Shown in pieces: positions 4,177 through 55,616 of a DNA stretch of 64,000 nucleotides. The stretch spans positions 186,001-250,000 of the IMG/VR virus record IMGVR_UViG_3300023174_005338. One strand, given 5' to 3'. The stretch's first letter is position 1. Each line of letters opens with the position of its first letter. A model generated the notes under the pieces. That model was not told the DNA's origin and made no database searches. It saw only the letters and a program-made list of their open reading frames with translations. Position numbers and translations under genes: made by a program.

Positions 4177-4179
4177 ACT

Positions 4180-16340: not shown

Positions 16341-16363
16341 AGAGATATTTATAAAATGGGTGG

Positions 16364-41882: not shown

Positions 41883-42415
41883 AAATAAAAATAACTGCTG
41901 AGTCTGTAGGCGTCTGCTGGCACAGGATTAAACATACCATGCCATTGTAAGGGCTGGCTACCGTCAGGATCAAGATGATTCAACATGATGTAGCCTGAAT
42001 TGGGCACACTGTCAAATTGATGTTTCAAACTATTTGTGTTTTTAAAATGATAAAACCCAGTTCCGTACTGGTCACTGGGCATTATCCAATATAGTTGCAT
42101 GGCATTAGGTAAATGCCCGTCGGTGTGCATGCTACAAGTAAATCCAGGTTCGTCCAACCACCAGTGCCCGTGGCAGGATTGAAATTCAGTGCCCAGGCTC
42201 TGATTGATTGTTGGCAAACACTTTTCTATGTATCGATTGACTTGTCTGACTCGTGAGTCATCATTTGTAATTTTTCTACGGGGCCAATTTTCTTGAAGAT
42301 TTTCTTTTTGCCAAGGCAGTTCAGTCCATTGTATTACTAAAATTTCATTCAATTGCTCTTGGGGCAACAGATCACTCACATGCCATAAACGATGATCAAT
42401 TTGTTCAATCATCAA
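41873..42415 (-). CDS. Putative 2OG-Fe(II) oxygenase-like protein
   Basis: MHTD (HxD), distal WHG, RLSSY. Confidence 0.5.
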   Translation of the reverse strand: MMIEQIDHRLWHVSDLLPQEQLNEILVIQWTELPWQKENLQENWPRRKITNDDSRVRQVNRYIEKCLPTINQSLGTEFQSCHGHWWLDEPGFTCSMHTDGHLPNAMQLYWIMPSDQYGTGFYHFKNTNSLKHQFDSVPNSGYIMLNHLDPDGSQPLQWHGMFNPVPADAYRLSSYFYFYK

Positions 42416-43878
42416 CTGAAAACCTTAACTCCATACTTTTGTTCAAATCTATCAGCGTCAGCACGATCGTTGATCATAGGCTCGCCTCTAATGTTGAGAC
42501 TGGTATTCAGCAACATGGGACATCCAGTGGCTTCATACCAGGCCTCTAAGAGCGATCTAATGCCTGAGCCGTCAGACGCAACAGTCTGTACTCGGCTAGT
42601 GTTATCCACATGACAGATAGCAGGGTATAGGTCAGGACGGCGGCAATTTGCGACTGACTGCATATAAGGACTGCTATGCCAACCGCGGGGCATATGAAAA
42701 AGTTCATGCACATGCTCTGCCAGGACAACCGGCGCAAACGGTCTAAACTTTTGCCTACGTTTGATCTCATTGACTTGATCCTTTATATCTGATCCTCGGG
42801 GATCGGCGAGGAGACTTCGATTTCCAAGGGCTCGGGGTCCAAATTCTGCTCGACCACTAGCGACACCGACGATTCTATCACTTTGTAAATGATCAACGAG
42901 GGCATCAACAGGATACGTTCCTGAGATTGCATGGCCAAGGAACGCATTCCGCCAGTGGAGGCGTCTTCCATGGGCCAGTGCGGCAGCACCAAGGCTGTTG
43001 CCAGCATCGCCAGGACAAGGCATGATCCAAATGTTTTCAAAATATTCACCGAGTTTTCTATTAGCAAGACAGTTCAAAGCCACGCCGCCCTGATAGACTA
43101 GATTAGAACTCCAGCCAAATTCTTGGGCACGACGCATAACACTATATATCAATTCTTCTGTTAAAACCTGGGCACTTGCGGCAATATCTTCGTTGGATGC
43201 AGACCGCAACCAGTCAGGCTCAATGCCTATGTGTAGATTGTCTTCCAGCAAGGCCCGGCATTCTTCAACGTAACATGGCTGTCCGTAGGCACTCATGCCC
43301 ATGGTGATGTATTCTTCATCTAGGGGGTGTAGGCCAATGCGCTGAGTAATCGCACTATAAAACAGCCCGATGCTCCTGGGATAAGTTTGGCTCCAAAGTT
43401 TCTTATAACATGCTCGATTTGTTGCGTTATATTCTGCTCCCCATATCGAGATGGTATCAAACTCGCCTATGGCATCTACGATCACACAAGTGGCACGATC
43501 GTAGGGGCTGGTTTGAAAACCTGCAGCCGCATGGCACAGGTGATGACTGTAAGTTTTTATCTGTCCGGGCGGATGTTGCAACCATGAGCCCAATTGATTC
43601 TTTAATATCTGCTTGACAGTCACATTGGACCAATCTATACCTTGTCCTGACACAAAATTACGTGCTTGTTTTAACCAAGGACGTTCATAATATGCAATGG
43701 TGTCTATGTCGTATTCACAGAATTCTGTCAATAATTCTGGACAAAGATTGGCATCGTTTTTCTTTTTTGAATATCGTTCGCTGTGACCGGCAAATACAAT
43801 TTCACCGTCGCTGCGTATGAGCGTGGCAGCTGCGTCATGAAATCCAGCACTGAGTCCCAGTGTGTACTGATGCTTCAT
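42412..43878 (-). CDS. Carbamoyltransferase (CmcH/NodU/TobZ family)
   Basis: GFHDAAA, HHLCHA, GGVALN, GPRALGNRSLLADPR, RPFAP, LNTSLN. Confidence 0.93.
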   Translation of the reverse strand: MKHQYTLGLSAGFHDAAATLIRSDGEIVFAGHSERYSKKKNDANLCPELLTEFCEYDIDTIAYYERPWLKQARNFVSGQGIDWSNVTVKQILKNQLGSWLQHPPGQIKTYSHHLCHAAAGFQTSPYDRATCVIVDAIGEFDTISIWGAEYNATNRACYKKLWSQTYPRSIGLFYSAITQRIGLHPLDEEYITMGMSAYGQPCYVEECRALLEDNLHIGIEPDWLRSASNEDIAASAQVLTEELIYSVMRRAQEFGWSSNLVYQGGVALNCLANRKLGEYFENIWIMPCPGDAGNSLGAAALAHGRRLHWRNAFLGHAISGTYPVDALVDHLQSDRIVGVASGRAEFGPRALGNRSLLADPRGSDIKDQVNEIKRRQKFRPFAPVVLAEHVHELFHMPRGWHSSPYMQSVANCRRPDLYPAICHVDNTSRVQTVASDGSGIRSLLEAWYEATGCPMLLNTSLNIRGEPMINDRADADRFEQKYGVKVFS

Positions 43879-43976
43879 TTGTAAATAAACGGGTCTCGTT
43901 TGCGAAGTTCTTTTAATTTTTTACGATAACGAATTTCTAATTTGATACGATCGATTAAGATTTTTATCCAAGACAT
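43875..43976 (-). CDS. 33 aa basic peptide MSWIKILIDRIKLEIRYRKKLKELRKRDPFIYK
   Basis: Manual translation; fills the gap and is ATGA-coupled to the carbamoyltransferase. Confidence 0.6.
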   Translation of the reverse strand: MSWIKILIDRIKLEIRYRKKLKELRKRDPFIYK

Positions 43977-45019
43977 TTGATTTGTTTCTCCATGTAATCG
44001 GTGTCACTCCAGTCATATTCATACTCATCACCGGCTGTGCTGGTGCGTATGGCATGAACATTAAGATGTGTATTTAATTGATGCCAAATTTCACGATAAT
44101 CTTCTGTTCCAAAACTGCGAACAAGATCCACTTGCCCTACCTGTGGATGTCCAATGGTCAAACTCTTGTTGTTTGGGTCAATGCCATTGGCCGTTAGCCA
44201 TTCGCGGAATTCCTTTAACTGTCGGATCTGCCAGGGAAATTCACCCGGATTGTTGGCCCACTCTATGTCAAAGTCGCCCGCGGCCTCAGTCTGATTTTTG
44301 AGGCTGGTGGTTGTGAGTTCTCCTAGTCTTGAGTCACGTCCTTCGTCCTGGAACACTTCCCAGTGATGTTTGCCAACGGCTTTGTTCACACCCACATATA
44401 CTCCGCCCAGACTGCGATTGATTGTGTCAATCCCAAACAGTTCATAGTCTTCTGCATCCAACACGAATCTTGGAGCTGATAGCCAGCACATGAGTTGGCT
44501 GGGTCTTTGCCATTCAGGTGCTGTGTGTTTTTTGCGCCACGATAGCTGCCAGCTTTCAAACTCGTGACACAGGAGATTTAATTGTCTGATGTGCCAGCGT
44601 GTGGCGTTGTCGGCACGCCAGTAGTAATCGCTGATGTGTCCGCTGCTGCCTTGTAGATCTTCAAAGTATCTGTGCAGTTGATTGAAATGATCGTGATTGA
44701 CTCCGCCTCGATCATCCACACTGTTGATCATATCAAAGTGATCCGTTATATGATATCCTATGCTGGAATTGTTTATGGCCTGTATGCTGAGATTTATTTG
44801 TTCCAATAGATAAGGGCCATTTCTAGGACCGTCTGCAAATCCAAAAAAACAATAGTTCTTTTCCAAGTGATAATTATTTTGTAGAAGATTGTTCAAAGCG
44901 GCCAGCCATTTGCGACTGAGACTGTTGTCATACACGTTGACATACACACGCAACACATTGTCTGGCGTGCCTAGATCTAGCTCTACAACATCAAGCGGTA
45001 ATTGATTGGTACCAGTCAT
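43964..45019 (-). CDS. Hypothetical protein
   Basis: 351 aa ORF coupled within the radical SAM operon. Confidence 0.7.
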   Translation of the reverse strand: MTGTNQLPLDVVELDLGTPDNVLRVYVNVYDNSLSRKWLAALNNLLQNNYHLEKNYCFFGFADGPRNGPYLLEQINLSIQAINNSSIGYHITDHFDMINSVDDRGGVNHDHFNQLHRYFEDLQGSSGHISDYYWRADNATRWHIRQLNLLCHEFESWQLSWRKKHTAPEWQRPSQLMCWLSAPRFVLDAEDYELFGIDTINRSLGGVYVGVNKAVGKHHWEVFQDEGRDSRLGELTTTSLKNQTEAAGDFDIEWANNPGEFPWQIRQLKEFREWLTANGIDPNNKSLTIGHPQVGQVDLVRSFGTEDYREIWHQLNTHLNVHAIRTSTAGDEYEYDWSDTDYMEKQIKCLG

Positions 45020-46298
45020 AGATATCCTGATTTGATCTTAGTATGTCGGCCATGGTATAGGAATCGCCACGTATTTGTTCTAATTTTAGCACACGACGTT
45101 TGCCTTTTGCAAGTTCTGCTTGCCATTGTTCAGGCCATTGTTCAGCGAATGTGGGTCGTTGTTTGAGTTGTAGCAACACATCTTGTAAGGCACCAGCAGG
45201 CAGTTTTGCTACCAGATTGTCTACGGTGCTGTCTAACAACGGTCTAGGCAAGGCCAAAGGACTCATAATGATATCGGGAGTAAAACTAAATATTACCTTG
45301 GCCAAGACATCCACTCCTAGCTCATCGGCTAGCTGTTGTATGTTTTCCACTTCAAACAGGCCAGGCAAGGTCAAAGTAAAGTCAATGCGCATTTGTCTGC
45401 GATGTCGAACATGTTCAAGGCCTTGTTTAAAGTTTACCAACCACCCATCGTAGGCCAGTCCTGTGCGGATGTATTCTCCTGTTTTTCCTGTTCCGTCGAG
45501 GCTGGCACAAATTTGCCAATCACGTAGATATACCAAGACATCACGGTAAAGATTACAACCACGCCAATACACGCGACTGAGATTAGTATTGTATCTTGCA
45601 TAAACATTTTTTGCATCTCCTAGTTCAATAATTCTGCGCATGTAGCGCCAGTGTTGTTCGTACATCAGTGGTTCGCCGCCCACCCAATAAACTTCTTCCA
45701 CACGATGTTGTTCCACAGCCAAGGCAAATTCAGCTTCAATCTGGCTGTCTTGATAGGCTGTGATTTGTTCGCGCACAGCGGGTTGCATCCAGGTGTTTTT
45801 GGGATTGCTCCAATCAATCATGTTGTGTTGACGTTGTTCGCTTTCCCACGCACTGGATAACATGTCTCCGCAAGTACGACATTTGAAATTACAAAGATTA
45901 CTGAATCTGTAATCCCAACTCACAGGTCGAACCCGGGTGAATCCATAGCGATCTGTAGACCTCATACATTCTTCATATTTGTGTTCAAACAATCGATTGA
46001 AATAATCTCTATATACATCAGTGTTCAATAACTTGTTGTTGCACACTTCGCATTCAGGCAATGTCTCGCCTTTCATCATTCTTAACCTCACGCTTCGCAT
46101 GTGAGGACTGTTCCAGTGTTCGTCTAGGCCAACCGGTTGATAGGTACCAGTGCCGGTGGCAGTGTCAATATACTGTTCAAAGTTTTGTGCAGGTTCTCTG
46201 CTGGCACAACACATGCGTCTTTCAGTTTGTGGACTAAGGTATGTGTGTGTCCATGGCGCCATGCACAAGGTTTCGGGTCTTTTAGCAGGGGCCGGCAT
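44991..46298 (-). CDS. Radical SAM protein with N-terminal twitch/SPASM-like domain
   Basis: CMAPW...MCC...CEVC; CNFKCRTC; VGGEP; NTNL. Confidence 0.88.
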   Translation of the reverse strand: MPAPAKRPETLCMAPWTHTYLSPQTERRMCCASREPAQNFEQYIDTATGTGTYQPVGLDEHWNSPHMRSVRLRMMKGETLPECEVCNNKLLNTDVYRDYFNRLFEHKYEECMRSTDRYGFTRVRPVSWDYRFSNLCNFKCRTCGDMLSSAWESEQRQHNMIDWSNPKNTWMQPAVREQITAYQDSQIEAEFALAVEQHRVEEVYWVGGEPLMYEQHWRYMRRIIELGDAKNVYARYNTNLSRVYWRGCNLYRDVLVYLRDWQICASLDGTGKTGEYIRTGLAYDGWLVNFKQGLEHVRHRRQMRIDFTLTLPGLFEVENIQQLADELGVDVLAKVIFSFTPDIIMSPLALPRPLLDSTVDNLVAKLPAGALQDVLLQLKQRPTFAEQWPEQWQAELAKGKRRVLKLEQIRGDSYTMADILRSNQDIYDWYQSITA

Positions 46299-47499
46299 AT
46301 TCTATCAATTGTGCAAATTCGGGTTCCACGGTGGCAAGATTTTGTTGTCGTTTGCGATCAAGATCGGCCACTCGCATGCGCAGTATAAATCCATCTAAAC
46401 TGGCACCATTGTTCATAAAATCAACGATTTTGATAAATTCATCCTGATGTTGTTGACTGACCTGTGCCTGACCAAGTCTTTGTGTTACTGTTTGTTTGAC
46501 CGACTCGGGCAAGGTATTGATACTGAAATAGTAGGCTTCATGCATCATATTCCAATACACAAAATCAAATGACTGCGTATCGATCCACGTGGCCAGGTCT
46601 TCAAGATAGTACACATTGAACACATTCACGGTACTACATACTTGTAGTTGTATATTGCTATGGCGATCACGCATGAGCGCAAATTTGTTTATATTTTCTA
46701 CCACCTCTGACCATACGGCATTGGTGCGTTGATATTCAAATCTAGCACCCACGTCATCGATGCTGAAAGCTATTTCCACAGTTTTAAAATGTTGCCATAC
46801 GTGCTCGGCCTGCTCAGGATACTGTGTGCCGTTGGTATTGTAGTGTATTTCTATGTTGCGAGCTAGACCGCGATCCACCAGGCGTTGCAACAGGTCAAAG
46901 TGTTCTTGTATCATGAATGGTTCACCACCAGTAAACTCGATGTATCTGATCTGATCTGATACTTGTTCAATCTCCTGCCAGAATGTGGGATTCTCTCTGG
47001 GCCAGGCACCTGCCCGCAACATTTGATAGTGATGATTGCTTTTGCGATCTTCGTCAGGTCCTAGGTTGGCCAGTTCTTCTGTGGCAAAGGTGCTTGAGCT
47101 CCAGCTACCACAGATACGGCATTTAAGATTACATATATTGCCCAATTTTAAATCTAAAAACATCAAAGGTTCGGCATCTAATGTCCAGTCTGTCACAGGT
47201 AACATGTGCTTGAGTCTGTCCAAGGTGTGCATGCGTTTGCTAGTACGGCCTGCACGTTCTTCTCTCCAGCACTTGCGGCATGTTTGTGGTTGTTCACCAT
47301 CAATAAACTGTTGTCTTAATCTGCGCATACTATGGCTATTTTGTATGGTGGCAAACTTGGCAGTGGCCAGATTAAACTTTTCTCCTGAGTTATCTACTAT
47401 TTCTTCTTCGGCCAAGCAACAAGGTCTCACAGTGCCAACGGGACTGGTTTCCAAGCTGACCCAAGGCAACACACAAAATTTATTGTGAGGTATTTTCAT
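46282..47499 (-). CDS. Radical SAM protein with N-terminal twitch/SPASM-like domain
   Basis: CVLPW...PCC...CRKC; CNLKCRIC; TGGEP; NTNG. Confidence 0.88.
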   Translation of the reverse strand: MKIPHNKFCVLPWVSLETSPVGTVRPCCLAEEEIVDNSGEKFNLATAKFATIQNSHSMRRLRQQFIDGEQPQTCRKCWREERAGRTSKRMHTLDRLKHMLPVTDWTLDAEPLMFLDLKLGNICNLKCRICGSWSSSTFATEELANLGPDEDRKSNHHYQMLRAGAWPRENPTFWQEIEQVSDQIRYIEFTGGEPFMIQEHFDLLQRLVDRGLARNIEIHYNTNGTQYPEQAEHVWQHFKTVEIAFSIDDVGARFEYQRTNAVWSEVVENINKFALMRDRHSNIQLQVCSTVNVFNVYYLEDLATWIDTQSFDFVYWNMMHEAYYFSINTLPESVKQTVTQRLGQAQVSQQHQDEFIKIVDFMNNGASLDGFILRMRVADLDRKRQQNLATVEPEFAQLIEYAGPC

Positions 47500-48848
47500 A
47501 ATTGTTTTAAAATTCTATGTTGTCTTCCGGCTGGTGCTCGAGTTGATTCTGGTCTATACTGCATGATCGCTTGCAATTCTGGAACCACATCAATCAATTG
47601 TTCATTGCGACACCAGTCAAGATCATCCACAGTGCGCCAAAAATCTGGCAGTAGATGTTGATTGTTCGTGGCCATCATGAACTCTATGGCTCCACGAAAT
47701 CCGCCCACAGCTCTTTGTATGGTATCAATAGGTTGGAGCCAGGCAATGTGATCTTCAAAATCCTGTTTGAATTGCTGTTTGATTTCTGGCGGCAACATGT
47801 CTATGCGATAGTTCTGAGGACCTTGCAGGATATTCAAGTTGAAATCCTTGGCCTCAATAAATCCTGATTCCACCATGTAGCGATGAAAACGAGTAAAGTT
47901 CCAGATGTTCATCATGCTAAGAGTAGGACTGATCATGAAATCTATGTGCGGACATTCTCTTTTGAGATCACGTATGTTTTGTTCTACTTTGTCCCAGTTG
48001 GTGCCTGATCTTATAACCTCAGCTCTGGCCCCCATGTCATCCAAGCTGGCAGCAACACAAACATTCGGAAAGTGTTTCCATAATTCTAACACACTTTCTC
48101 TTTTGTAGTTTAAATCATTGAGATTGGTATTGTAGATCAATCGCACATTGGTATTGCCTTTTTCAATCAGCAGTTTAAGAATGCGATTGTGTTCTTCCAT
48201 GATCAAAGGTTCGCCACCGGCAAAGTATATCTGTTCCAGGTGTGGAATGTGCTCTTGCATTTGTTCCCATACATCTTCTTCATGGCGCCCAGCAAAACTC
48301 ACACGTGGACGCAATTCTTTGCCCCAGAGTTTGACATCATCATCATACCACCGGCTGCTGAATATACTGCCACAACTGCGACATTTTAATTGACAGATGT
48401 TGCTGAATCTCACGTCCCAGTAGTGCAATTGAAAATCTGGGTAGGTTCCGTCGGGTAAGGTTTGATCTACACTGTCTATGAACTGTGCAAAGTTTTTGTT
48501 GCTGTTGTTACGCATGCTGGCAAAACCTGCGGCTTCTTGTTCATAGCAATCAGCACACTCTCGACAGGGCCGGTCATCCAACATGTTACGACGCATTTCA
48601 CGCATGGGCTCATCATTCCAAATTTCACGCATGGTCTTTTCTTTGAAGTTGCCCACTGGATGTTTGGCTACTCCCAAGCAACAAGGATAAGCACGACCGT
48701 CGGGCCAGGCATGCAAATGTATCCAAGGCAACATGCAGAACGAGTCCGAATCCATGAGTCGGTGACGTTGTTGTTCGGTAAGATCTTCTAGTTTGACGTA
48801 GCTGGGAACTCGGTCATTCCAGTTATATTTGCCTAATATTTTGCTCAT
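47496..48848 (-). CDS. Radical SAM protein with N-terminal twitch/SPASM-like domain
   Basis: CMLPW...PCC...CADC; CQLKCRSC; AGGEP; NTN. Confidence 0.88.
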   Translation of the reverse strand: MSKILGKYNWNDRVPSYVKLEDLTEQQRHRLMDSDSFCMLPWIHLHAWPDGRAYPCCLGVAKHPVGNFKEKTMREIWNDEPMREMRRNMLDDRPCRECADCYEQEAAGFASMRNNSNKNFAQFIDSVDQTLPDGTYPDFQLHYWDVRFSNICQLKCRSCGSIFSSRWYDDDVKLWGKELRPRVSFAGRHEEDVWEQMQEHIPHLEQIYFAGGEPLIMEEHNRILKLLIEKGNTNVRLIYNTNLNDLNYKRESVLELWKHFPNVCVAASLDDMGARAEVIRSGTNWDKVEQNIRDLKRECPHIDFMISPTLSMMNIWNFTRFHRYMVESGFIEAKDFNLNILQGPQNYRIDMLPPEIKQQFKQDFEDHIAWLQPIDTIQRAVGGFRGAIEFMMATNNQHLLPDFWRTVDDLDWCRNEQLIDVVPELQAIMQYRPESTRAPAGRQHRILKQL

Positions 48849-50182
48849 AATGTATCGTACCATTCTTTCAGCACAGGAAATGTCTCCGTAAAGTTTTTGT
48901 TTCTACGCTGATCGTATTGTGTATAAAACTGTCGGAAATCGTTGAGTAGTTTAGGCATGTCAAAGGCTTCACTGTGTGGAGTTTTCACTTGGTCTAGGTA
49001 TGCTATCAATCGCTGAGTGTGATTGACCTCATGTTCGTGCATGTAATCTTGATTGCGATGTTTGTCTAACCACATGATCAAACGATTACGATAATATAAC
49101 TTCAAATGCTCAGGCAAGACCAATGAGCTTTGAAAACTAGGAAATCTTAGAATATTCAGGGTAAAGCTCACACGTTCACGCCCATAGACCTTTTTCAATC
49201 GCACCAATTGATCTAAAAACGTGTCCAGGCTGTCTAAACACAAGGCATTGATGGTGCACATGACATGAACAGCACGTATGTGATCATGCTCCAAGAGTTC
49301 TTGCGCATTGTGCATCCAAAGATCATAGTCTAGCCCGTCTCTGATGTATTCGGCCTGGGTGCCGTGGGCTTCATTGCTGGTATAAATTTCCAAGTGTGGT
49401 ATATCCTTTGTTTTTTCCACAAACTCCAACAACTTGAGACGATCCATGCCTAGATTTGAGTTGATGGCCAGGCGTGTGGAACTTTTGCCTTTGTTGGTCT
49501 TGAACCAGTCAATCAGCCGCCACAGTTCACCGCTCATGGTAGGCTCGCCGCCGGTTATGCGGAGTTCTTGTAAGGTCTTGTGTAGATCGGATTCCCACCA
49601 GGCAAAAAATGCATCAACATAGGGATTTGATTCGCCAAATCGATACACTTGAGCACTGTCATGTTCGTGTGTGAAATGATTACGACCATCGCTGACAAGA
49701 TTTGTATAGGCGCCGTTGTTTCGGATATCCTTGACCCAGGTGCTGCTGAAAGCAGGATTACAATAACTGCAAGCAAACTGGCAGGTGCGATCAAACGCTA
49801 TTTCAAGAGTACGTAGATTCACGTCGTCTTGTGGCGGCGTGGCAAATGCCTGATCAAGGGCCTCTAAGGGATATATTTTGCTTTTGTAAACACGGTCACT
49901 GACAGCATCCACTCCCATGTCTTCAATCTTCCAGCAGTACTCACAGCCAGGCGGACGTTCACCGGTCAGCATTTGCACACGGTCTTGTTTCTTTTGTTTG
50001 GTGTTGTGTATAGCACTGGGATTGGTCTTGATTTCTTCTCGATCAATGGCATGTGCCGGTGGATGATGGCAACTGGTAGTCTGTCCTGATCCCAACCATA
50101 TGGTAGCATTGTACCACTTGGCCGCACAGAAGCTGGCACTTTTAGTGTCCAGGACTTGTTGTTTAAACTCCAGATCGTTCAT
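48845..50182 (-). CDS. Radical SAM protein (CxAKW/HPP subfamily)
   Basis: CAAKW...SCHHPP...CEYC; CQFACSYC; TGGEP; NSNL. Confidence 0.88.
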   Translation of the reverse strand: MNDLEFKQQVLDTKSASFCAAKWYNATIWLGSGQTTSCHHPPAHAIDREEIKTNPSAIHNTKQKKQDRVQMLTGERPPGCEYCWKIEDMGVDAVSDRVYKSKIYPLEALDQAFATPPQDDVNLRTLEIAFDRTCQFACSYCNPAFSSTWVKDIRNNGAYTNLVSDGRNHFTHEHDSAQVYRFGESNPYVDAFFAWWESDLHKTLQELRITGGEPTMSGELWRLIDWFKTNKGKSSTRLAINSNLGMDRLKLLEFVEKTKDIPHLEIYTSNEAHGTQAEYIRDGLDYDLWMHNAQELLEHDHIRAVHVMCTINALCLDSLDTFLDQLVRLKKVYGRERVSFTLNILRFPSFQSSLVLPEHLKLYYRNRLIMWLDKHRNQDYMHEHEVNHTQRLIAYLDQVKTPHSEAFDMPKLLNDFRQFYTQYDQRRNKNFTETFPVLKEWYDTL

Positions 50183-51230
50183 TGATATATTGGGCAAACT
50201 GTTGTGGGAACTCTTTACGAACTTGCAGACGAAGTTCTGCCAAGCGTTGTTGATTGTATTTACATTTATCTTCTGCAGCCGTTATAAAACTTGATAAATC
50301 TTGCCGGCAAAGATCGTTGACCACGGTCACTATGCGGGCCAGGCGTTCTTGATTGTTGTCAATTTGATCAAATGATTCATCTATCACGTGACCAAAGGTT
50401 TGAAATCCTAACTTGTGTATATCACGATAGTAGCCTCGGTTGGCTACGGCTATCCACGGGTGTCCAATTGCTACTGGCTTCCATATCTTTTCTGTTCTAA
50501 AACTGTACGGATAATCAAATACAGTCTCAGTTACTAGGCTAAAGTAAGTGTCGAGATATGGCCTAGGATTAAGATATATTTCGCCCCAATCGTTGTTGAA
50601 CAATGCCGGTTTGGCATATCCTGACATAGACATGGTAGTATTTTGTTTGTAAAAATCAAATTCATAACAAGCGGGTAAAAGTTTGATATCACCTGCTGCC
50701 GAGTCCAAGTTGGTCCACAGAGCTTGATCCAACACGTTGGCCAGATTGTCTAACAACTGTCGACGATGACGCCGTCCACGACCATTCAGACACAAAAACT
50801 TGTAAGGTCGCGAATCTGACCATTGATCCTTGTACTGCTGTATGGCCAAGTAGTTCTCACTGTAGTCAAGAATCTTGGGCATGAAGTTTTCGTAGTAAAG
50901 ATAAGGTATATCCGATTGCATGTGCCCACCCGAGATGATCAAGATACGACCTTGCTGGACCAGTTCTTGTATGCCCAGGCCTTGTATTTGCCGGAGCATG
51001 GTGTCGCTGCCTTCGGCTGGATTGCCCAGTATGGGTAGTATGGTGCCTTGAGTGGCTAGGTCACGTATGCGATCAATGTTGGCGTTGAACTGTTGACGAC
51101 TGATAAGATAGATTGCTCCGGGTATCACCTTGTGCGTGGCAAAGTCATAGAAAGATTCATCTTGCCAGGCTCTGGTGAACTCCTTGACTTCACAACATTG
51201 ATCAACAACCAGCTTACGATTGCCGAGCAT
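50163..51230 (-). CDS. Hypothetical protein, GT-B/fucosyltransferase-like C-terminus
   Basis: ETVFD...RTEKIWKPV...GFQTF...DESFD; start uncertain (51230 or 51257). Confidence 0.55.
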   Translation of the reverse strand: MLGNRKLVVDQCCEVKEFTRAWQDESFYDFATHKVIPGAIYLISRQQFNANIDRIRDLATQGTILPILGNPAEGSDTMLRQIQGLGIQELVQQGRILIISGGHMQSDIPYLYYENFMPKILDYSENYLAIQQYKDQWSDSRPYKFLCLNGRGRRHRRQLLDNLANVLDQALWTNLDSAAGDIKLLPACYEFDFYKQNTTMSMSGYAKPALFNNDWGEIYLNPRPYLDTYFSLVTETVFDYPYSFRTEKIWKPVAIGHPWIAVANRGYYRDIHKLGFQTFGHVIDESFDQIDNNQERLARIVTVVNDLCRQDLSSFITAAEDKCKYNQQRLAELRLQVRKEFPQQFAQYINERSGV

Positions 51231-52629
51231 GGTACTCACATTCCGCCCACCAGGCACTCATTTCAGGAAACACAGTCAAAAAATCAGTACCGTGCCTGCG
51301 ATCTGCTTCGTTAAAAAAGCGATAAAAGTCTGCTTTGTTTTGTTTTATATATGTGGGATCCAGTTGTTGGCCATCACGCATCCAGGCTATGTCACGATCT
51401 AGCCTAGCTATCTCATAATCTTTGAATCCTTGGAATCTGGTGGCTTCAGTTTCTGTTTGTCGTATCATCCAGGCCCAAAGATATTCTAACTGTTCTGCAT
51501 ACGACTCGGGCAAGATTTGCAGGCTCTGCCAGGCGGGTTGGCGCAACACCGGAGTATCAAACCATACTCGTTGATAAGTCTTGCTGTAAATTTTACGCAG
51601 ACCCAGTATGCCTGCAAACAAATTTGGAAGTCCAGTAACACTTAGATTGTTCATGGTCACGATAAATGTCACACTGTTACGACCAGGAATCTCAGTAAGG
51701 AACTGATTTACTCTGTCCCACAATAAATCAAAGTTCAGGCCGTGTCTGATGTATTCGGCCTGTGAACCAAAACTGTCAAGACTGACATACTGCATGAAGT
51801 GTTCAATCCGTTCGCCCTCACACAATTGTTTGACATAGCCTAGATACTTCTGCCAAGATTTTTCATCCACGCTGAAGTTTGATGTCACGTTCAAGTGTAA
51901 ATCTGGTTTGGGATTGTCCAACACATAGTCAAACACTCGATAGGTATTTCGATCTAGTAAAGGTTCACCACCGGTCATACGGAAGTGTTCCAGTTCTGGA
52001 TATAAGGTAGGCCACCACGCCCAAAACGCATCCACATAAGGGTTTTGTTCTCTTACTGGTATAGGACGATTACGCCCAACAAAGTGGCTAGGATCATTGT
52101 GGACAGTTGAAGTAGGATATCCACCATGGGTGTTAACTTCCTGCTGCCAGGTGCTCGAAAACTGCGGACTGCAATAGCTACAAGCAAGATTACAAGCATG
52201 ATTAAAATTGACTTCGACATAACTAGGGACAACATCTTCATCTCCGATTGAATTTACTACAACATCAAAGTCCTTGGCAGCCCAGGGCTCACCACTACGG
52301 TAGTGTCTATCTGATAATTTGTTGTTATCTTCCATTGCCCAACAATAGCCGCACTCGCTAGAGCGTTCTTGCCGTAACATTATCTTACGCTGTTCTTTTT
52401 TGTGCGGAGTATTATGTAACGCACTAGGATTGTCTGCTAATAGCTCTGCAGGAATAGGGTGCAGTGGAGGATGATAACAACTGTTGTTAAGCCCTGTGGG
52501 CAAGTGTAGGCTAACCTGTTTCCATTTGGCCAAGCAGAGTGCGGGGCCAAGATTCGCCTTCATGAACTCTGCATCGCCTAGGAATTTTGATTTAAAGTCG
52601 GTTACAACTTCATCGCCTTTGTTTTGCAA
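51214..52629 (-). CDS. Radical SAM protein (CxAKW/HPP subfamily)
   Basis: CLAKW...SCYHPP...CGYC; CNLACSYC; TGGEP; TSNF; TTG start. Confidence 0.88.
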   Translation of the reverse strand: MQNKGDEVVTDFKSKFLGDAEFMKANLGPALCLAKWKQVSLHLPTGLNNSCYHPPLHPIPAELLADNPSALHNTPHKKEQRKIMLRQERSSECGYCWAMEDNNKLSDRHYRSGEPWAAKDFDVVVNSIGDEDVVPSYVEVNFNHACNLACSYCSPQFSSTWQQEVNTHGGYPTSTVHNDPSHFVGRNRPIPVREQNPYVDAFWAWWPTLYPELEHFRMTGGEPLLDRNTYRVFDYVLDNPKPDLHLNVTSNFSVDEKSWQKYLGYVKQLCEGERIEHFMQYVSLDSFGSQAEYIRHGLNFDLLWDRVNQFLTEIPGRNSVTFIVTMNNLSVTGLPNLFAGILGLRKIYSKTYQRVWFDTPVLRQPAWQSLQILPESYAEQLEYLWAWMIRQTETEATRFQGFKDYEIARLDRDIAWMRDGQQLDPTYIKQNKADFYRFFNEADRRHGTDFLTVFPEMSAWWAECEYHARQS

Positions 52630-52630
52630 T

Positions 52631-53560
52631 TTACCAACCTTCTTGCTGTCGTATTACATCAATTTCTCTAGTCATTACACCACGGTTGTGCCAATTGCTT
52701 CTGTAGTGTTGTTTGAAGAAAGCACTCTCTGGCGCCATGACATTGAGCATGGGTAGATCTAGTTGTGTAGCAAGATCTTCGGCCACACGTCCGGCCAATA
52801 TATCAGGATTGGTATCTTTGACTGTGTGCCAAAGTTGTTCTAGTTCTGCAAAGTCTTGTACTGCTCGATGATTCCATTGCGGAGTGATCATGGTCATGTA
52901 TGTGCCCATTCTTGCCCCAGCTATAGCCCAGGCACCGTGTTCCACATCACGTCCTATGTTGTGCCATATGGTTAAATGATCTAGATTACGTTGATGCACA
53001 CGTTCGCGGAATTCTGCTATTGTAGGCCTGGCACCTCGGTTTAGGCACATCTTGACTCCTTCACGGAAGCCGGCACGCCATGCATGAAATGCCGATCCAT
53101 TGGGATATGTTGTTGAATAACAATCATGCATGGCCCAATACAATGGATCAAAACAAAACTCTACTTCGGTTTCTGCTGTACCGTTGGTAGCTTCATGCGT
53201 TTTCATATTGTTGGCAAAGGTTCTAGTCCATGAACTTAGTCCACCGTTACCGTACATGAGTCCGTTGACATGATTACGAGCACGCCAACGAAACACGGCT
53301 TGCTCATATTCTGGAGTAGAGAACTTCAAAGTAAGATTAAAAAACTGTTGATTAGGAATATTATCCCCGTCAATAAGAATAAAACGTTCGGTGTCGCTGG
53401 CACCAGCAGCGGCCTTGTGTGCAGCATCACTGCCTTTGACTCCATCAACTCTGCGGGCCCAAGGAATCATGTTTTTGATTTTGACCCATGTTTCTTCTTT
53501 GTTGGGCTCGTCGTAGGTCAAGTATATGCAGTCTAAATCTGCTATGTCAACTGAGTTCAT
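52631..53560 (-). CDS. Glycosyltransferase-like (GT-A) protein
   Basis: YLTYDEPN, VKGSDAAHK, LIDGDN (DxD). Confidence 0.55.
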   Translation of the reverse strand: MNSVDIADLDCIYLTYDEPNKEETWVKIKNMIPWARRVDGVKGSDAAHKAAAGASDTERFILIDGDNIPNQQFFNLTLKFSTPEYEQAVFRWRARNHVNGLMYGNGGLSSWTRTFANNMKTHEATNGTAETEVEFCFDPLYWAMHDCYSTTYPNGSAFHAWRAGFREGVKMCLNRGARPTIAEFRERVHQRNLDHLTIWHNIGRDVEHGAWAIAGARMGTYMTMITPQWNHRAVQDFAELEQLWHTVKDTNPDILAGRVAEDLATQLDLPMLNVMAPESAFFKQHYRSNWHNRGVMTREIDVIRQQEGW

Positions 53561-53903
53561 GATTTACCGTGTTCCATTTCACATATGGTTGATCCAGATC
53601 GACTATTACGCACACATCGCGAGGATCGCATGTGGTTCCATTCAAGTCGCTGGGTTGTAATTTTTTAACAGTGATAACCGATTTGATATAGGTAAGTTTA
53701 CCATCGATTACCTTGACATTAAACGGCGCCAATGCATACGTTGACTGATCCACTTCTACGTAATTACCAGGCAATTCCTCCATGCTGTAGATTATAGGAG
53801 ATCCATCATCATTGTAATACAACCTATAGAATATGGGTTTAGGTTCCGGAATAGCTCTCAAGATCGCCCAAAATTCTTCTTCGGTTAATGGAGTGTCACT
53901 CAT
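53547..53903 (-). CDS. Hypothetical protein
   Basis: Coupled ORF in minus-strand operon. Confidence 0.65.
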   Translation of the reverse strand: MSDTPLTEEEFWAILRAIPEPKPIFYRLYYNDDGSPIIYSMEELPGNYVEVDQSTYALAPFNVKVIDGKLTYIKSVITVKKLQPSDLNGTTCDPRDVCVIVDLDQPYVKWNTVNHELS

Positions 53904-54159
53904 CTTTGGCCTTTTGAAGATTACGTTTTTCTTGGATAGTCAAATGATCTTTGACTGTTTTATTGTGTCTGGGATTTGAACACATGGGACAATTGGGAAC
54001 GCCACAGTCCATGGCATGATGTTTGGCCAAACGGTGTGGTTCCTCTACAACTTTGTTGACCATGCCGTGGCTTTTGGCAATCTTTAATTGTTTCTCGATA
54101 GCAGCATGGTCTTTGTGTAGCCGTTTGCTGTGTTTAAATTTGTCTTGGTCTTTGCTCAT
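53896..54159 (-). CDS. Small basic His/Cys-rich protein
   Basis: HHAMDCGVPNCPMC possible metal site. Confidence 0.6.
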   Translation of the reverse strand: MSKDQDKFKHSKRLHKDHAAIEKQLKIAKSHGMVNKVVEEPHRLAKHHAMDCGVPNCPMCSNPRHNKTVKDHLTIQEKRNLQKAKDE

Positions 54160-54877
54160 TTGTCCACTCCTTGATGTGATAGTGCACCATGCCCCATTGA
54201 GACACAGTATTAATTCTAAATGGGTCGTTTTCCCATATTAGTTCTTTTGTCCAGTCGTCTCGTTGTATAGGATTGATATGGCGTTTCATGTGTACTATAG
54301 TTGGGCCTAATCCTGCGGGCAAGGTCACTCGTTCTGGACCCATGATGACAGCGGCCATGGCATATACTACGTCAGTTGTTGGCAACTCATCTGGAAATTT
54401 TAAAATCTTCTTGTAACTATCCCACTGTTCAAATATTTGTCGCACCAAATCAAAAAATTCTTTGGCAGTTGCACTGAGTCTCCAATAAGTGATGGCATTA
54501 TATACATCAGGCAACTGATTTTGATCAAAGATTTTTCTATACGATCTTGACTCGGCAGGTTGATCATAGAATGTTCTGGCGCCTTGACTCACAACCACAT
54601 CGCGATGCTCAAACAAAGTCCACCAGTGATCTATTGGACTGGCACAAATCATGTCCGCTTCTAGTTTAATAGTTTGCCTGTAAGGACTTATTGCAAAACA
54701 TTGCCAGTCATTGGCAAAGCCACCTTGATCACCATAGGGCAACATGTCTGCTGTGACAATGGTCACATTGGCCGCAGGATGGAGTTTGATAATACTGTCT
54801 TTGAGTTGTTTAGCACAGCGTTCGTATTCTGTGCCAATGGCTGGAATCACATAGCCACGTTCATGAGTGATTGGCAA
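54134..54877 (-). CDS. GT8-like glycosyltransferase-fold protein
   Basis: SPYRQTIKLEADM, YNAITYW, IVHMK. Confidence 0.5.
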   Translation of the reverse strand: MPITHERGYVIPAIGTEYERCAKQLKDSIIKLHPAANVTIVTADMLPYGDQGGFANDWQCFAISPYRQTIKLEADMICASPIDHWWTLFEHRDVVVSQGARTFYDQPAESRSYRKIFDQNQLPDVYNAITYWRLSATAKEFFDLVRQIFEQWDSYKKILKFPDELPTTDVVYAMAAVIMGPERVTLPAGLGPTIVHMKRHINPIQRDDWTKELIWENDPFRINTVSQWGMVHYHIKEWTNEQRPRQI

Positions 54878-55616
54878 CGATGTCTCCTAATTGGCTCTTG
54901 CCCATGGCATGGAAATCTTGAGTCAGCTCAATCCACCGAGCACGTCCTTCGCTGTTTACAAAATCCACACGATACTGATCTTGTGATAATAGTGTAAGTT
55001 GGTGTTCGGGAGTCAGTGTAGCCAGTCGCCAAGGTATATCGGGATGATCTAGAGTGTGCCCATTTACGATCAGCAAGGCGATACTGAGTGCGTGATCGTT
55101 TCTGTATGTGGGTGTGTTATTTTTGTAAATGTTTCGGTAGTGAGTCCAATTGTCTCGTATCATGGCCATGGCGTCAAATATTAATTCTGCCTGGCGACAC
55201 TTGTTGAAGATCATGACAGTGGCCCACCACATGGGCATACGCACACCGCCAAAATAATTAAGGCCTTGAAAGTTGTTGCATCCAGTGACATCATAGGCCC
55301 AGCGGTGTGCTACAAAGTCTTGACCCGAATCTAACACACTGCGCAGTTGATCACTTGCAACCACATAGTCAGCATCCAACACCAGAGTACGGTCCCAGGG
55401 TGTGAGTCTGTACGCATCCATCCTATTGGTGTTGTGCCAGGCCACCGTGCCCACATCTGAGAAATGCCTTGACCCCGAATCTGTCCTGGAATCATCGGTT
55501 ACTATGTGTGTGGGTATGCCTAGATGTCGTTCTATGTTCTTGGCACTCCAACAGGCCATGGCCTTGTAATCAATCTGATCATTGTTGCGAGCAAATATCA
55601 ACGCACCTGTAGTCAT
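54861..55616 (-). CDS. GT8-like glycosyltransferase-fold protein
   Basis: TPWDRTLVLDADY (DxD), WATVMIF, RNDHALSIA. Confidence 0.55.
   Translation of the reverse strand: MTTGALIFARNNDQIDYKAMACWSAKNIERHLGIPTHIVTDDSRTDSGSRHFSDVGTVAWHNTNRMDAYRLTPWDRTLVLDADYVVASDQLRSVLDSGQDFVAHRWAYDVTGCNNFQGLNYFGGVRMPMWWATVMIFNKCRQAELIFDAMAMIRDNWTHYRNIYKNNTPTYRNDHALSIALLIVNGHTLDHPDIPWRLATLTPEHQLTLLSQDQYRVDFVNSEGRARWIELTQDFHAMGKSQLGDIVANHS

What the first reader, a model, noticed from the sequence alone, without database searches (positions are those of the whole stretch)
44991..52629. Array of five radical SAM paralogues with an N-terminal auxiliary Fe-S domain
Seen: five CxxxCxxC/GGEP proteins are translationally coupled on the minus strand, interrupted only by a GT-like gene. 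Each has a Cys-rich twitch/SPASM-like module before the radical SAM core, the reverse of the usual order. Two subfamilies: CxxPW...CC (three genes) and CxAKW...SCxHPP (two genes). A sixth enzyme (15333-16340) has the conventional C-terminal module. Established: SPASM/twitch enzymes act on peptides, proteins, sugars or cofactors. Inference: retained divergent paralogues suggest sequential steps or a heteromeric complex in a phage-specific pathway with the adjacent carbamoyltransferase and GT-like genes. The substrate (virion glycan, host surface, DNA base or peptide) cannot be read from sequence.
Basis: partly seen in the sequence, partly recalled or inferred. Interest (0 to 1): 0.72.

Follow-up and report, generated by a model that had tools for sequence, protein, structure and literature searches.

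The report
Phage operon of five radical-SAM paralogues
A 337-kb freshwater jumbo phage carries a tightly packed operon of five old, selectively maintained radical SAM enzymes whose extra iron-sulfur domain sits in front of the catalytic core. They lie among sugar-transferase and carbamoyltransferase genes; the enzyme family is already catalogued, but nobody knows what it does.

Summary
Five minus-strand genes (44991-52629) each score well above the curated cut-off of NCBIfam NF033640 (N_Twi_rSAM). Each has four invariant N-terminal Cys, then CxxxCxxC and GGEP. The genes overlap by 4-44 nt, with one poorly supported GT-like gene inserted. The reversed domain order is therefore a known, curated family feature, but I found no functional study.

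New findings:
- The five genes are five distinct orthologous types. All five are kept where the contig covers the array, in 65 related viral contigs (R3 49-93% identical). dN/dS is 0.02-0.13.
- In 15 of these contigs R3 and R2 are fused into one ~850-aa protein.
- The same types recur in unrelated metagenomic arrays.
- The conserved module also holds two GT8-like genes, a GT2-like gene, an unknown-fold protein and a TobZ/NovN-type O-carbamoyltransferase. NDP-sugar genes lie nearby.
- The genome has 13 radical SAM genes.

Best reading (about 0.4): non-redundant radical tailoring steps on a carbohydrate or glycoconjugate. A protein or peptide substrate is the main rival. The substrate remains undetermined. 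Known marker genes for two DNA-base modification routes are absent. The cultured Ralstonia phage RsoM2USA carries a reduced syntenic version and could serve as a test system.

The parts
51214..52629 (-). R5, N-terminal-twitch radical SAM enzyme (471 aa), 'CxAKW...SCxHPP' subfamily
   Evidence: NF033640 at 301.5 bits. Own orthologous clade, 59-87% identical in related contigs. An R5-type gene follows an X309-like gene in Ralstonia phage RsoM2USA.
50163..51257 (-). Inserted gene of a virus-only family, possibly GT10/GT-B-like. It occupies a variable slot and is a paralogue of 39707-40897.
   Evidence: No Pfam, PHROG or NCBIfam hit. Atlas: viral clusters at 0.97; nearest Pfam lead is GT10 at 0.80; structural neighbours are fused to methyltransferase or NDP-sugar epimerase domains. 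A profile search of PDB sequences found nothing. Absent at this position in most far-clade contigs.
48845..50197 (-). R4, N-terminal-twitch radical SAM enzyme (445-450 aa), same subfamily as R5
   Evidence: NF033640 at 306 bits. 33% identical to R5. Own clade, with a member in the unrelated array L078.
47496..48863 (-). R3, N-terminal-twitch radical SAM enzyme (450 aa from the ATG at 48848). It is the most canonical member and the most conserved within the near clade.
   Evidence: NF033640 at 408 bits. More than 7000 homologues, many at 80% identity or more. AF2 model pLDDT 92. Fused to R2 in 15 related contigs.
46282..47499 (-). R2, N-terminal-twitch radical SAM enzyme (405 aa)
   Evidence: NF033640 at 345 bits. 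ATGA overlap with R3. Forms the C-terminal half of the ~850-aa fusion proteins.
44991..46298 (-). R1, N-terminal-twitch radical SAM enzyme (435 aa)
   Evidence: NF033640 at 280 bits. About 70% identical even in the far clade (61-78% overall). Sister sequence in L078.
52631..53560 (-). X309, GT2-like (GT-A) protein directly upstream of R5; conserved core partner
   Evidence: Atlas score 0.99 to a viral cluster auto-named 'Glycosyltransferase 2-like domain'. Present in all contigs that reach this position. 38% identical homologue directly before the R5-type gene in RsoM2USA. No PDB sequence hit.
54134..55616 (-). X247 (54134-54877) and X251 (54861-55616), tandem GT8-like (glycogenin-like, GT-A) glycosyltransferase paralogues
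   Evidence: A family profile hits glycogenin at E 5e-5 over the N-terminal ~105 positions. Both hit phrog_1903. Conserved in all contigs that reach this position and in RsoM2USA.
53547..54159 (-). X118 (53547-53903) and X87 (53896-54159), small proteins of unknown function inside the module
   Evidence: ORFs. X118 is conserved in the near clade; X87 is present in only some contigs. X118 has no NCBIfam hit; X87 was not scanned against any family library.
55613..55921 (-). X102, first gene of the module after the terminator-like hairpin; function unknown
   Evidence: Conserved in nearly all contigs that reach it, and 27% identical in RsoM2USA. No NCBIfam hit.
55954..55973 (-). Terminator-like hairpin (8-bp stem, 5 G-C pairs, tetraloop, T-rich tail) between tail-fibre gene 55991-57001 and X102
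   Evidence: A consensus match only; the total count of such sites in the region is not above the shuffled controls.
43964..45019 (-). X351, conserved protein of unknown fold between R1 and the carbamoyltransferase; occurs as two allelic types
   Evidence: AF2 model pLDDT 89 with no PDB match (best E 0.17); it matches only uncharacterised AFDB clusters. Orthologues fall into a 59-82% identity type and a 33-43% type, mixed across clades.
42412..43878 (-). O-carbamoyltransferase of the NodU/CmcH/TobZ family, last conserved gene of the module
   Evidence: Pfam Carbam_trans_N and Carbam_trans_C. PDB sequence hits to NovN (3e-48), GdmN and TobZ. Present in the contigs that reach this position, and 47% identical next to the array of marine contig L075.
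40863..41882 (+). Amidinotransferase (accessory: near clade only)
   Evidence: PDB sequence hits to arginine:glycine amidinotransferase (1e-14), HsvA, StrB1 and SxtG; the aligned active-site Cys and His are kept. 79-93% identical in the near clade. Absent from complete far-clade genomes.
39707..40897 (+). Second copy of the virus-only GT-like family (paralogue of 50163-51257)
   Evidence: 22% identical to 50163-51257 in alignment A4, with shared invariant columns. No Pfam, PHROG, NCBIfam or PDB sequence hit.
15333..16370 (-). R6, radical SAM enzyme with the conventional C-terminal SPASM module; not part of the array
   Evidence: Pfam Radical_SAM at residues 22-170 and SPASM at 265-286. Three more paralogues of this type elsewhere in the genome.

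Best explanation
SHOWN. The array is the core of a conserved ~14-kb co-oriented module: X102, two GT8-like genes, small ORFs, a GT2-like gene, R5, a variable slot, R4, R3, R2, a variable slot, R1, X351 and an O-carbamoyltransferase. It occurs in a widespread clade of ~320-355-kb freshwater jumbo phages. R1-R5 are five old, distinct orthologous types of the NF033640 family. All five are under purifying selection, so they are non-redundant. R3 and R2 work as a pair, because they are one polypeptide in a sister lineage.

INFERRED. Each enzyme binds a [4Fe-4S] cluster at CxxxCxxC, cleaves SAM to the 5'-deoxyadenosyl radical and abstracts a hydrogen from a different position or intermediate. The N-terminal twitch cluster has four invariant Cys, so it is probably fully ligated. 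It would then act as an electron conduit or acceptor, as in BtrN and anSME. That favours oxidation, epimerisation or deoxygenation-type steps.

The most likely substrate class is a carbohydrate or glycoconjugate. It would be assembled by the interleaved GT-A/GT-like enzymes from phage-made amino or deoxy sugars, then O-carbamoylated (and amidinated in the near clade). The product would be displayed on the virion or on the infected cell envelope. The product and its destination are not known.
For: Family membership and motifs.

Conservation and non-redundancy:
- Five orthologous groups, each with SH-aLRT 95-100, and with members in the unrelated arrays L078 and L075.
- All five are retained in the related viral contigs that cover the array.
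- dN/dS is 0.02-0.13 with saturated dS.
- Gene overlaps of 4-44 nt, and no strong terminator-like site inside the array.
- R3-R2 fusion: N-terminal half ~51% identical to R3, C-terminal half ~47% to R2. The Atlas holds an 851-aa viral cluster of 73 members. Tandem double-domain proteins occur elsewhere in the family.

Carbohydrate context:
- The X247/X251 profile hits glycogenin (GT8) at 5e-5.
- X309 is GT2-like by Atlas.
- The carbamoyltransferase is homologous to NovN, GdmN and TobZ.
- DegT aminotransferase, two NDP-sugar epimerase/dehydratases, a UDP-Glc/GDP-Man dehydrogenase, a PIG-L deacetylase and an FkbM methyltransferase lie in the same window.
- A GT2::N_Twi_rSAM fusion protein exists (P0211).
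- A bacterial cluster begins with a sugar nucleotidyltransferase followed by about ten radical SAM genes.
- A carbamoyltransferase and a GT1 flank the marine array L075.
- An X309-like GT is paired with an R5-type enzyme in RsoM2USA.
- The top structural match of the core is the sugar-nucleoside enzyme BlsE (Z 12.3), though it barely exceeds the peptide enzymes.
Against: - No member of NF033640 has a known substrate in the literature I could search.
- Structure matches do not discriminate. CteB, SkfB and anSME (peptide or protein substrates) score Z 11.4-11.8, next to BlsE, MoaA and viperin.
- Relatives are often fused to TPR or Sel1 repeats, which bind proteins.
- Two single-copy bacterial members sit next to M3 and M16 peptidases, not glycan genes.
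- The two lone paralogues in this genome lie beside ClpP and the terminase, not sugar genes.
- The GT identity of 50163-51257, 39707-40897 and X309 is a lead, not a demonstration.
- Co-expression and complex formation are untested.
- The phage encodes no SAM synthetase or flavodoxin of its own.
Confidence: 0.4

Rival explanations
1. Protein or peptide maturases. The five enzymes act directly on a polypeptide, such as a virion protein (the neighbouring tail fibres) or a small phage protein. They would install cross-links, epimerisations or oxidised residues, as most SPASM/twitch enzymes do. The glycosyltransferases would then decorate the same protein.
For: - The closest solved cores include CteB, SkfB, anSME, AlbA and SuiB.
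- TPR and Sel1 fusions are common in the family.
- Bacterial single-copy members lie next to M3 and M16 peptidases and a second radical SAM gene.
- The module sits directly downstream of two tail-fibre genes in all related contigs that reach them and in RsoM2USA.
- GT8 glycogenin, the nearest solved relative of X247/X251, is itself a protein-glycosylating enzyme.
Against: - No RRE/PqqD domain anywhere in the genome.
- I did not recognise a precursor-like small ORF with repeated Cys/Ser/Thr motifs in the module (not searched exhaustively).
- A terminator-like hairpin separates the tail-fibre genes from the module.
- GT and carbamoyltransferase genes are interleaved with the radical SAM genes, and a GT2 fusion exists.
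Confidence: 0.25
2. Small-molecule pathway. The module makes a diffusible aminoglycoside- or aminocyclitol-like carbamoylated and guanidinylated glycoside in the infected cell (for example against competitors or other phages), rather than a surface glycan.
For: The enzyme set resembles antibiotic tailoring toolkits:
- a TobZ/NovN/GdmN-type O-carbamoyltransferase;
- an amidinotransferase related to StrB1, SxtG and HsvA;
- a DegT/StrS aminotransferase;
- a BtrN-like Cys spacing of the twitch module (compared with BtrN from my own knowledge).

A cyanophage paper lists DegT-like, radical SAM and amidinotransferase genes as 'antibiotic synthesis genes' (PMC12801897).
Against: - The amidinotransferase is missing from complete far-clade genomes that keep all five radical SAM genes.
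- No exporter or self-resistance gene was recognised in the window.
- Several GT-A-type genes in tandem are more typical of glycan assembly.
Confidence: 0.15
3. Nucleic-acid or nucleotide modification. The enzymes build a hypermodified DNA base or nucleotide that protects the phage genome.
For: Radical SAM enzymes take part in phage DNA modification routes (QueE in 7-deazaguanine routes; my own knowledge). Viperin, MoaA and QueE, which act on nucleotides, are among the core matches. Campylobacter phages with 11-12 radical SAM genes are known (PMC2853527).
Against: - The complete genome has no thymidylate-synthase-like hydroxymethylase and no TGT/DpdA.
- The neighbours are glycosyltransferase-like and sugar-nucleotide enzymes.
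- The Campylobacter phage enzymes are not NF033640 members.
Confidence: 0.05
4. Redundant or decaying duplicates. The paralogues are recent tandem copies with overlapping function, on their way to loss.
For: Copy number varies in the slots between the core genes. One related contig (L003) has its R5 orthologue in three pieces.
Against: - Paralogues are only 20-33% identical.
- Each type forms its own clade across lineages in which R3 has diverged to about 50% identity.
- dN/dS is at most 0.13.
- The L003 breaks are three single-base insertions, at least two of them at short homopolymer runs, in a sequence otherwise 99% identical to the intact L001. They are most simply assembly errors.
Confidence: 0.03

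Closest known systems
NCBIfam NF033640 (N_Twi_rSAM, 'twitch domain-containing radical SAM protein')
   Same: All five proteins, and two more in the genome, score above the curated cut-off over the full model length. They carry the N-terminal four-Cys module, CxxxCxxC and GGEP.
   Different: The family is a name without a function. I found no paper on it. What is added here: five conserved types in one operon, the R3-R2 fusion, the link to carbamoyltransferase and GT genes, and the heavy viral representation.
C-terminal twitch/SPASM radical SAM enzymes (BtrN, anSME, BlsE, CteB, SkfB, DesII)
   Same: The radical SAM core superposes at Z 10-12. One auxiliary cluster module has a Cx18C...Cx2C spacing. 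It probably works alike: H-abstraction by 5'-dA radical, with the auxiliary cluster as electron conduit (inference).
   Different: The auxiliary module lies before, not after, the core. A C-terminal helical domain (about residues 354-431 of R3) has no solved counterpart. Whole-chain TM by query is at most 0.37. No RRE domain.
Five-radical-SAM plus amidinotransferase cluster of Campylobacter phages CP220/CPt10 (Timms et al. 2010, PMC2853527)
   Same: A large lytic phage with 11-13 radical SAM genes. Five of them sit in one variable cluster together with an amidinotransferase. Function unknown.
   Different: The Campylobacter enzymes match only the radical SAM core of NF033640 (at most 35 bits), so they are not the same family. 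Here the amidinotransferase is accessory, and the conserved partners are GT-A-like genes and a carbamoyltransferase.
Sugar- and antibiotic-tailoring toolkits (TobZ/NovN O-carbamoyltransferases, StrB1 amidinotransferase, DegT/StrS aminotransferases)
   Same: Homologues of each lie in or next to the module.
   Different: No core scaffold genes of any known aminoglycoside or aminocoumarin pathway were recognised. The context is a phage genome next to tail-fibre genes.

Membership tests
NF033640 N_Twi_rSAM | Whole-protein score above the curated cut-off (170 bits), covering the full model | tested here: met
   R1 279.7, R2 345.3, R3 408.2, R4 306.0 and R5 301.5 bits. Model coverage runs from positions 1-3 to 387-398 of 398; confirmed on the genome.
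NF033640 N_Twi_rSAM | Cys-rich twitch module N-terminal to the radical SAM core | tested here: met
   Pfam SPASM at residues 9-106 precedes Radical_SAM in R1-R3. Four invariant N-terminal Cys in all five. They are invariant or nearly so across 55 family members.
Radical SAM superfamily | CxxxCxxC cluster motif and GGE SAM-binding motif | tested here: met
   C157/C161/C164 and G216-G217-E218-P219 are invariant. R2 and R3 exceed the Pfam Radical_SAM cut-off; the others fall below it. The core superposes on solved enzymes at Z 11-12.
Radical SAM superfamily | Binds [4Fe-4S] and reductively cleaves SAM | not testable with these tools
   Needs anaerobic reconstitution, EPR or Moessbauer spectroscopy, and a 5'-deoxyadenosine assay.
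SPASM subfamily (two auxiliary clusters, C-terminal) | Seven or eight conserved Cys in a domain C-terminal to the core | tested here: not met
   Only four Cys are invariant and they are N-terminal. No conserved C-terminal Cys.
RiPP-maturing radical SAM enzymes | RRE/PqqD-like peptide-recognition domain in the enzyme or encoded nearby | tested here: not met
   No PqqD hit in the proteins or anywhere in the genome.
RiPP-maturing radical SAM enzymes | Adjacent precursor peptide gene | tested here: inconclusive
   The small ORFs X87, X102 and X118 exist in the module but show no repeat or Cys/Ser-rich core. ORFs under 60 aa were not examined systematically.
CP220-type phage radical SAM cluster | Homologous radical SAM genes clustered with an amidinotransferase | tested here: not met
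   CP220/CPt10 radical SAM genes score at most 35 bits against NF033640. The amidinotransferase is absent from far-clade genomes that keep the five genes. The resemblance is one of organisation only.
Glycan or sugar tailoring gene cluster | Recognisable glycosyltransferases and sugar-nucleotide enzymes in the same transcription unit or neighbourhood | tested here: met
   GT8-like X247/X251 (E 5e-5), O-carbamoyltransferase, and DegT, epimerase/dehydratases, UDP-Glc dehydrogenase and PIG-L in the window. The GT2-like and GT10-like assignments are leads only.
Glycan or sugar tailoring gene cluster | The radical SAM enzymes act on a carbohydrate | not testable with these tools
   Needs enzymology or product analysis.

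The most novel reading that the evidence does not exclude
The N-terminal-twitch family is in large part a viral enzyme family. Its five conserved types would form a phage-borne radical 'assembly line', with R3-R2 as an obligate pair. This assembly line would carry out several consecutive C-H functionalisations, of a kind not yet described for radical SAM enzymes, on a glycoconjugate or virion protein. The result would be a new class of phage surface chemistry in abundant, presumably oxic freshwater phages.
Probability: 0.3. Interest if true: 0.8.

Novelty: new variant of a known kind. Interest (0 to 1): 0.6.

Why it matters
Radical SAM enzymes are a main source of newly discovered enzyme chemistry. 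NF033640 is large: 10,743 clusters at 50% identity match R3. It is completely uncharacterised. Here it appears as a fixed set of five differentiated types, kept by selection in a widespread clade of lake jumbo phages, in a genome with 13 radical SAM genes.

This gives the family a defined genetic context: GT-A-like enzymes, an O-carbamoyltransferase and a natural R3-R2 fusion. It also gives a cultured relative, Ralstonia phage RsoM2USA, in which the function can be tested. If the product is a virion or cell-surface glycoconjugate, it would bear on host recognition and on phage-host conflict in freshwater bacteria. If it is something else, the chemistry is likely to be new either way.

Tried and rejected
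Steps that led nowhere:
- Megablast of the array against isolated phages: no match.
- tblastn of R3 against isolated phages: only four records.
- The search for related loci with the five-paralogue alignment failed for lack of a conserved stretch.
- The single scan of bacterial genome contigs gave only partial SPASM-like matches. None of those four genomes has a true family member.
- Literature searches for the family name, for an N-terminal SPASM/twitch, and for jumbo phage plus radical SAM found no functional study.
- PDB sequence search for R3: only a weak match to GDGT-MAS.
- Fold searches of the R3 model (PDB, Swiss-Prot AFDB, VIA wide) match the generic radical SAM core only and do not separate sugar from peptide enzymes.
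- Complex prediction for R3+R2 gave 'no answer' and is not used as evidence either way.
- No RNA sequencing run was listed for R3, so co-expression is untested. Read laying was not used, because only assembled DNA contigs were on offer.
- X351: confident model, no solved fold.
- The GT-like family 50163-51257/39707-40897: no hit by single sequence or by profile against PDB sequences.

Readings rejected:
- DNA-base modification is downgraded, because thymidylate-synthase-like and TGT/DpdA genes are absent.
- Pseudogenisation is rejected.
- Homology with the Campylobacter phage cluster is rejected.
- The amidinotransferase as an obligatory partner is rejected.

Full report
WHAT IS THERE

The window is bases 186001-250000 of a complete viral genome. 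It is 337,119 bp long, has direct terminal repeats, and has 46% G+C. Near-identical DNA is held by freshwater and lake metagenomes.

Five long ORFs lie on the minus strand between 44991 and 52629: R1 44991-46298, R2 46282-47499, R3 47496-48848, R4 48845-50182 and R5 51214-52629. One further ORF, 50163-51257, sits between R4 and R5.

- All five match NCBIfam NF033640, 'twitch domain-containing radical SAM protein' (N_Twi_rSAM). Scores are 280-408 bits against a curated cut-off of 170, over essentially the whole model.
- Pfam places its SPASM model at the N-terminus, before Radical_SAM, in R1-R3.
- In the five-way alignment the invariant residues are four N-terminal Cys (C43, C62, C103, C106 in R3 numbering), the CxxxCxxC triad (C157, C161, C164) and GGEP (216-219). 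The same columns are invariant or nearly so across 55 family members.
- Four Cys, not seven or eight, means one auxiliary cluster: a twitch rather than a full SPASM.
- Junctions are a 1-nt spacer, then overlaps of 17-44, 20-35, 4 (ATGA), 4 (ATGA), 17 and 29 nt, from X309 through X351.
- R4 and R5 (33% identical) form one strongly supported clade. R1, R2 and R3 are separate groups, 24-28% identical to each other.

One caveat: the 'GT-like' label of the inserted gene is only a lead.

THE ARRAY IS OLD, CONSERVED AND NON-REDUNDANT

R3 has more than 7000 homologues in metagenomes. Many are at least 80% identical and lie on contigs of up to 345-352 kb. I fetched 65 related viral loci and classified their ORFs against the window's proteins.

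The order is the same wherever the contig reaches: tail fibre (426 aa), tail fibre (336 aa), X102, X251, X247, (X87), X118, X309, R5, [slot], R4, R3, R2, [slot], R1, X351, carbamoyltransferase. This holds in a near clade (R3 68-93% identical) and a far clade (R3 about 50%). Each of R1-R5 has its own orthologue in both clades. In the far clade the identities are about 70% for R1, 59-69% for R5, about 60% for R4, about 50% for R3 and 44-51% for R2.

- A maximum-likelihood tree recovers five orthologous groups with SH-aLRT 95-100.
- Where dS could be estimated it is saturated, and dN/dS is 0.02-0.13 for all five.
- The one apparently broken R5 orthologue (L003) differs from an intact, 99%-identical copy by three single-base insertions. 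At least two of them lie at short homopolymer runs, so they are most simply assembly errors.

The paralogues are therefore not decaying.

The slots X309|R5, R5|R4 and R2|R1 are variable. They hold GT-like genes, extra N_Twi paralogues or, in L001, a radical SAM gene of another class. The GT-like gene that 'interrupts' the array in this window occupies one of these slots and is missing there in most far-clade contigs.

EVIDENCE THAT THE TYPES WORK TOGETHER

In 15 far-clade contigs there is no separate R2. Instead the R3 ORF is 738-852 aa long; the shortest one is cut off by the end of its contig. In the nine I checked, the N-terminal half is about 51% identical to R3 and the C-terminal half 46-52% identical to R2. 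The ESM Atlas holds this as an 851-aa viral cluster of 73 members. In this window the two genes overlap by ATGA. A natural fusion of neighbouring genes is classical evidence for a shared pathway or complex.

Tandem double N_Twi proteins also occur elsewhere in the family (P0121, P0122, P0124). Two unrelated metagenomic arrays contain members that branch with particular types:
- L078 has R1-, R2-, R3- and R4-type genes plus an R5-like fragment.
- L075 has R5-, R3- and R2-type genes, directly after a carbamoyltransferase that is 47% identical to the window's.

The set of types is thus a reusable toolkit, older than this phage clade. A direct complex prediction for R3+R2 returned no answer and is not evidence either way.

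CONTEXT

- The profile of the X247/X251 family matches glycogenin (GT8) at E 5e-5.
- X309 belongs to a viral family that the Atlas names GT2-like (score 0.99).
- The carbamoyltransferase has both Pfam domains and matches NovN, GdmN and TobZ at 1e-34 to 3e-48.
- X351 gives a confident model (pLDDT 89) with no solved counterpart. It comes in two allelic types that are mixed across the clades.
- On the opposite strand, just beyond the module, lies an amidinotransferase (AGAT 1e-14; also HsvA, StrB1 and SxtG; the aligned catalytic Cys and His are kept). It is 79-93% conserved in the near clade but absent from complete far-clade genomes. It is therefore an accessory, not a partner of the five enzymes.
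- The rest of the window is rich in sugar-nucleotide genes: DegT aminotransferase, two epimerase/dehydratases, a UDP-Glc/GDP-Man dehydrogenase, a PIG-L deacetylase and an FkbM methyltransferase.
- A terminator-like hairpin (55973-55954) separates the tail-fibre gene from X102. No comparably strong terminator-like site lies inside the array.
- The cultured Ralstonia phage RsoM2USA (343.8 kb) carries a reduced syntenic block: a gene with weak partial similarity to the 426-aa tail fibre, then X102, X251, X247, X309-like, an R5-type radical SAM gene and a second X309-like gene. This ties the R5 type to the GT2-like protein and offers an experimental system.

THE FAMILY AT LARGE

- R3 matches 10,743 clusters at 50% identity (E up to 0.001), and 1491 at E up to 1e-30.
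- None of 14 reference genomes has a member. Only 3 of 301 genomes sampled from one bacterial phylum do, each with a single copy.
- The nearest Atlas structure clusters are almost all viral.
- This phage has seven members and 13 radical SAM genes in all.
- Fusion partners in relatives are TPR repeats, Sel1 repeats and, once, a GT2 domain.
- A bacterial MAG has a sugar nucleotidyltransferase followed by about ten radical SAM genes, including four R3-type domains.
- Two single-copy bacterial members lie beside M3 or M16 peptidases.
- The two lone paralogues of this genome lie beside ClpP and the terminase.

The context evidence is therefore mixed at family level. It points to carbohydrates in the phage arrays.

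STRUCTURE

The AF2 model of R3 is confident (pLDDT 92, pTM 0.90). Foldseek and VIA-align match only the radical SAM core: BlsE Z 12.3, CteB 11.8, SkfB 11.8, anSME 11.4, MoaA 11.4, viperin 11.2, DesII 10.3. Whole-chain TM by query is at most 0.37. No solved structure has this architecture, and the matches do not discriminate between sugar, nucleotide and peptide substrates.

MECHANISM

Shown: family membership, motifs, conservation, gene fusion and gene context.

Inferred from established radical SAM chemistry: each enzyme reductively cleaves SAM at the CxxxCxxC cluster and abstracts a substrate hydrogen. A twitch cluster fully ligated by four Cys would serve electron transfer, as in BtrN and anSME. 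That favours oxidative or redox-cycling steps such as dehydrogenation, epimerisation or deoxygenation.

Five differentiated types imply five different positions or intermediates. I rate a carbohydrate or glycoconjugate substrate as most likely (about 0.4), a protein or peptide substrate next (about 0.25), a diffusible glycoside third (about 0.15), and DNA or nucleotide modification as unlikely (about 0.05). The last is low because the complete genome has no thymidylate-synthase-like hydroxymethylase and no TGT/DpdA. The phage encodes no SAM synthetase or flavodoxin, so it relies on the host for both.

COMPARISON WITH WHAT IS KNOWN

The proteins are members of NF033640, so the reversed domain order is a catalogued feature and not a discovery. 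I found no paper on the family.

The nearest described phage situation is the variable cluster of five radical SAM genes plus an amidinotransferase in Campylobacter phages CP220/CPt10, which have 11-12 radical SAM genes per genome (PMC2853527). Those enzymes are not NF033640 members, so the likeness is organisational only. A cyanophage paper lists DegT-like, radical SAM and amidinotransferase genes as 'antibiotic synthesis genes', without evidence (PMC12801897).

VERDICT

The enzymes are new members of a known but uncharacterised family. The conserved five-type operon with a natural fusion is an undescribed variant of multi-radical-SAM tailoring clusters. Interest 0.6.

Noticed in passing
window 40863-41882 (+): Amidinotransferase homologue (AGAT, HsvA, StrB1, SxtG) with the catalytic Cys and His kept. 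It is 79-93% conserved in the near clade but absent from complete far-clade genomes. Homologues occur in cyanophage S-SCSM2R, where it was reported in the virion proteome, and in Marine virus AG-345-D19, next to an N_Twi radical SAM hit.
   Followed up: partly
window 43964-45019 (-): X351 gives a confident AF2 model (pLDDT 89) with no solved-structure match. It occurs as two allelic types (59-82% versus 33-43% identity) distributed mosaically across both clades, as specificity-determining cassette genes often are.
   Followed up: partly
window 11282-12403, 21290-22264, 22419-23366, 26320-27210 (+): Host-like envelope and transport genes in a phage: a Gram-negative porin (Porin_4), two TctC-family receptors and a DctP (TRAP) solute-binding protein. 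Together with 46% G+C, the lake origin and the synteny with a Ralstonia phage, they suggest a freshwater Burkholderiales host. This is an inference only.
   Followed up: no
genome 331466-335133 (L087 7467-11133): The lone N_Twi paralogue R8 overlaps by 4 nt the gene for the terminase large-subunit ATPase domain. The terminase appears split: an HNH-endonuclease ORF lies between the ATPase-domain ORF and the nuclease-domain ORF.
   Followed up: no
genome 72823-74706 (L086 5823-7707): The lone N_Twi paralogue R7 overlaps by 11 nt the end of a ClpP protease gene.
   Followed up: no
genome 120477-120992 and 155930-156283: Two further radical SAM-like genes of other classes. The family scan reports one in-frame TGA inside the first match. 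The genome total is 13 Radical_SAM matches.
   Followed up: no
window 18-6224 (+): A run of metabolic genes: TPP-enzyme C-terminal domain, FkbM methyltransferase, NDP-sugar epimerase/dehydratase, phosphoribosyltransferase, a weak Fer4_12 (radical SAM-like) ORF, NAD synthase and UDP-Glc/GDP-Man dehydrogenase. DUF6071 (7248-7952) also lies next to the marine radical SAM array L075.
   Followed up: no
window 57017-58297 (-): Tail-fibre protein with a weak C-terminal Peptidase_G2/intramolecular-chaperone-like match. The 336-aa Ser/Thr/Gly-rich fibre protein (55991-57001) follows it, and is followed in turn by a terminator-like hairpin.
   Followed up: partly
L001 4317-5732; L003 6171-7589: In close relatives the slot between X309 and R5 holds an extra 471-aa radical SAM gene that is not N_Twi. 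In L003 the R5 orthologue carries three single-base insertions relative to L001 (99% identical), probably assembly errors.
   Followed up: yes
L081 (Ralstonia phage RsoM2USA, MG752970.1 217327-223553): A cultured jumbo phage has the syntenic block X102, X251, X247, X309-like, R5-type radical SAM, X309-like. All of these genes are annotated as hypothetical. A second NF033640 gene lies at 126888-128168.
   Followed up: partly
L080 (Vibrio phage K566, OZ196521.1 161548-168284): An isolated Vibrio phage has four adjacent N_Twi-like radical SAM genes and a fifth about 10 kb away. Two of them score above the family cut-off.
   Followed up: no
L095 10018-10767 (bacterial genome G175): An arginine-deiminase/amidinotransferase-superfamily ORF lies within 2 kb of a single-copy bacterial N_Twi radical SAM gene, beside an M3 peptidase and an amino-acid permease.
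   Followed up: no
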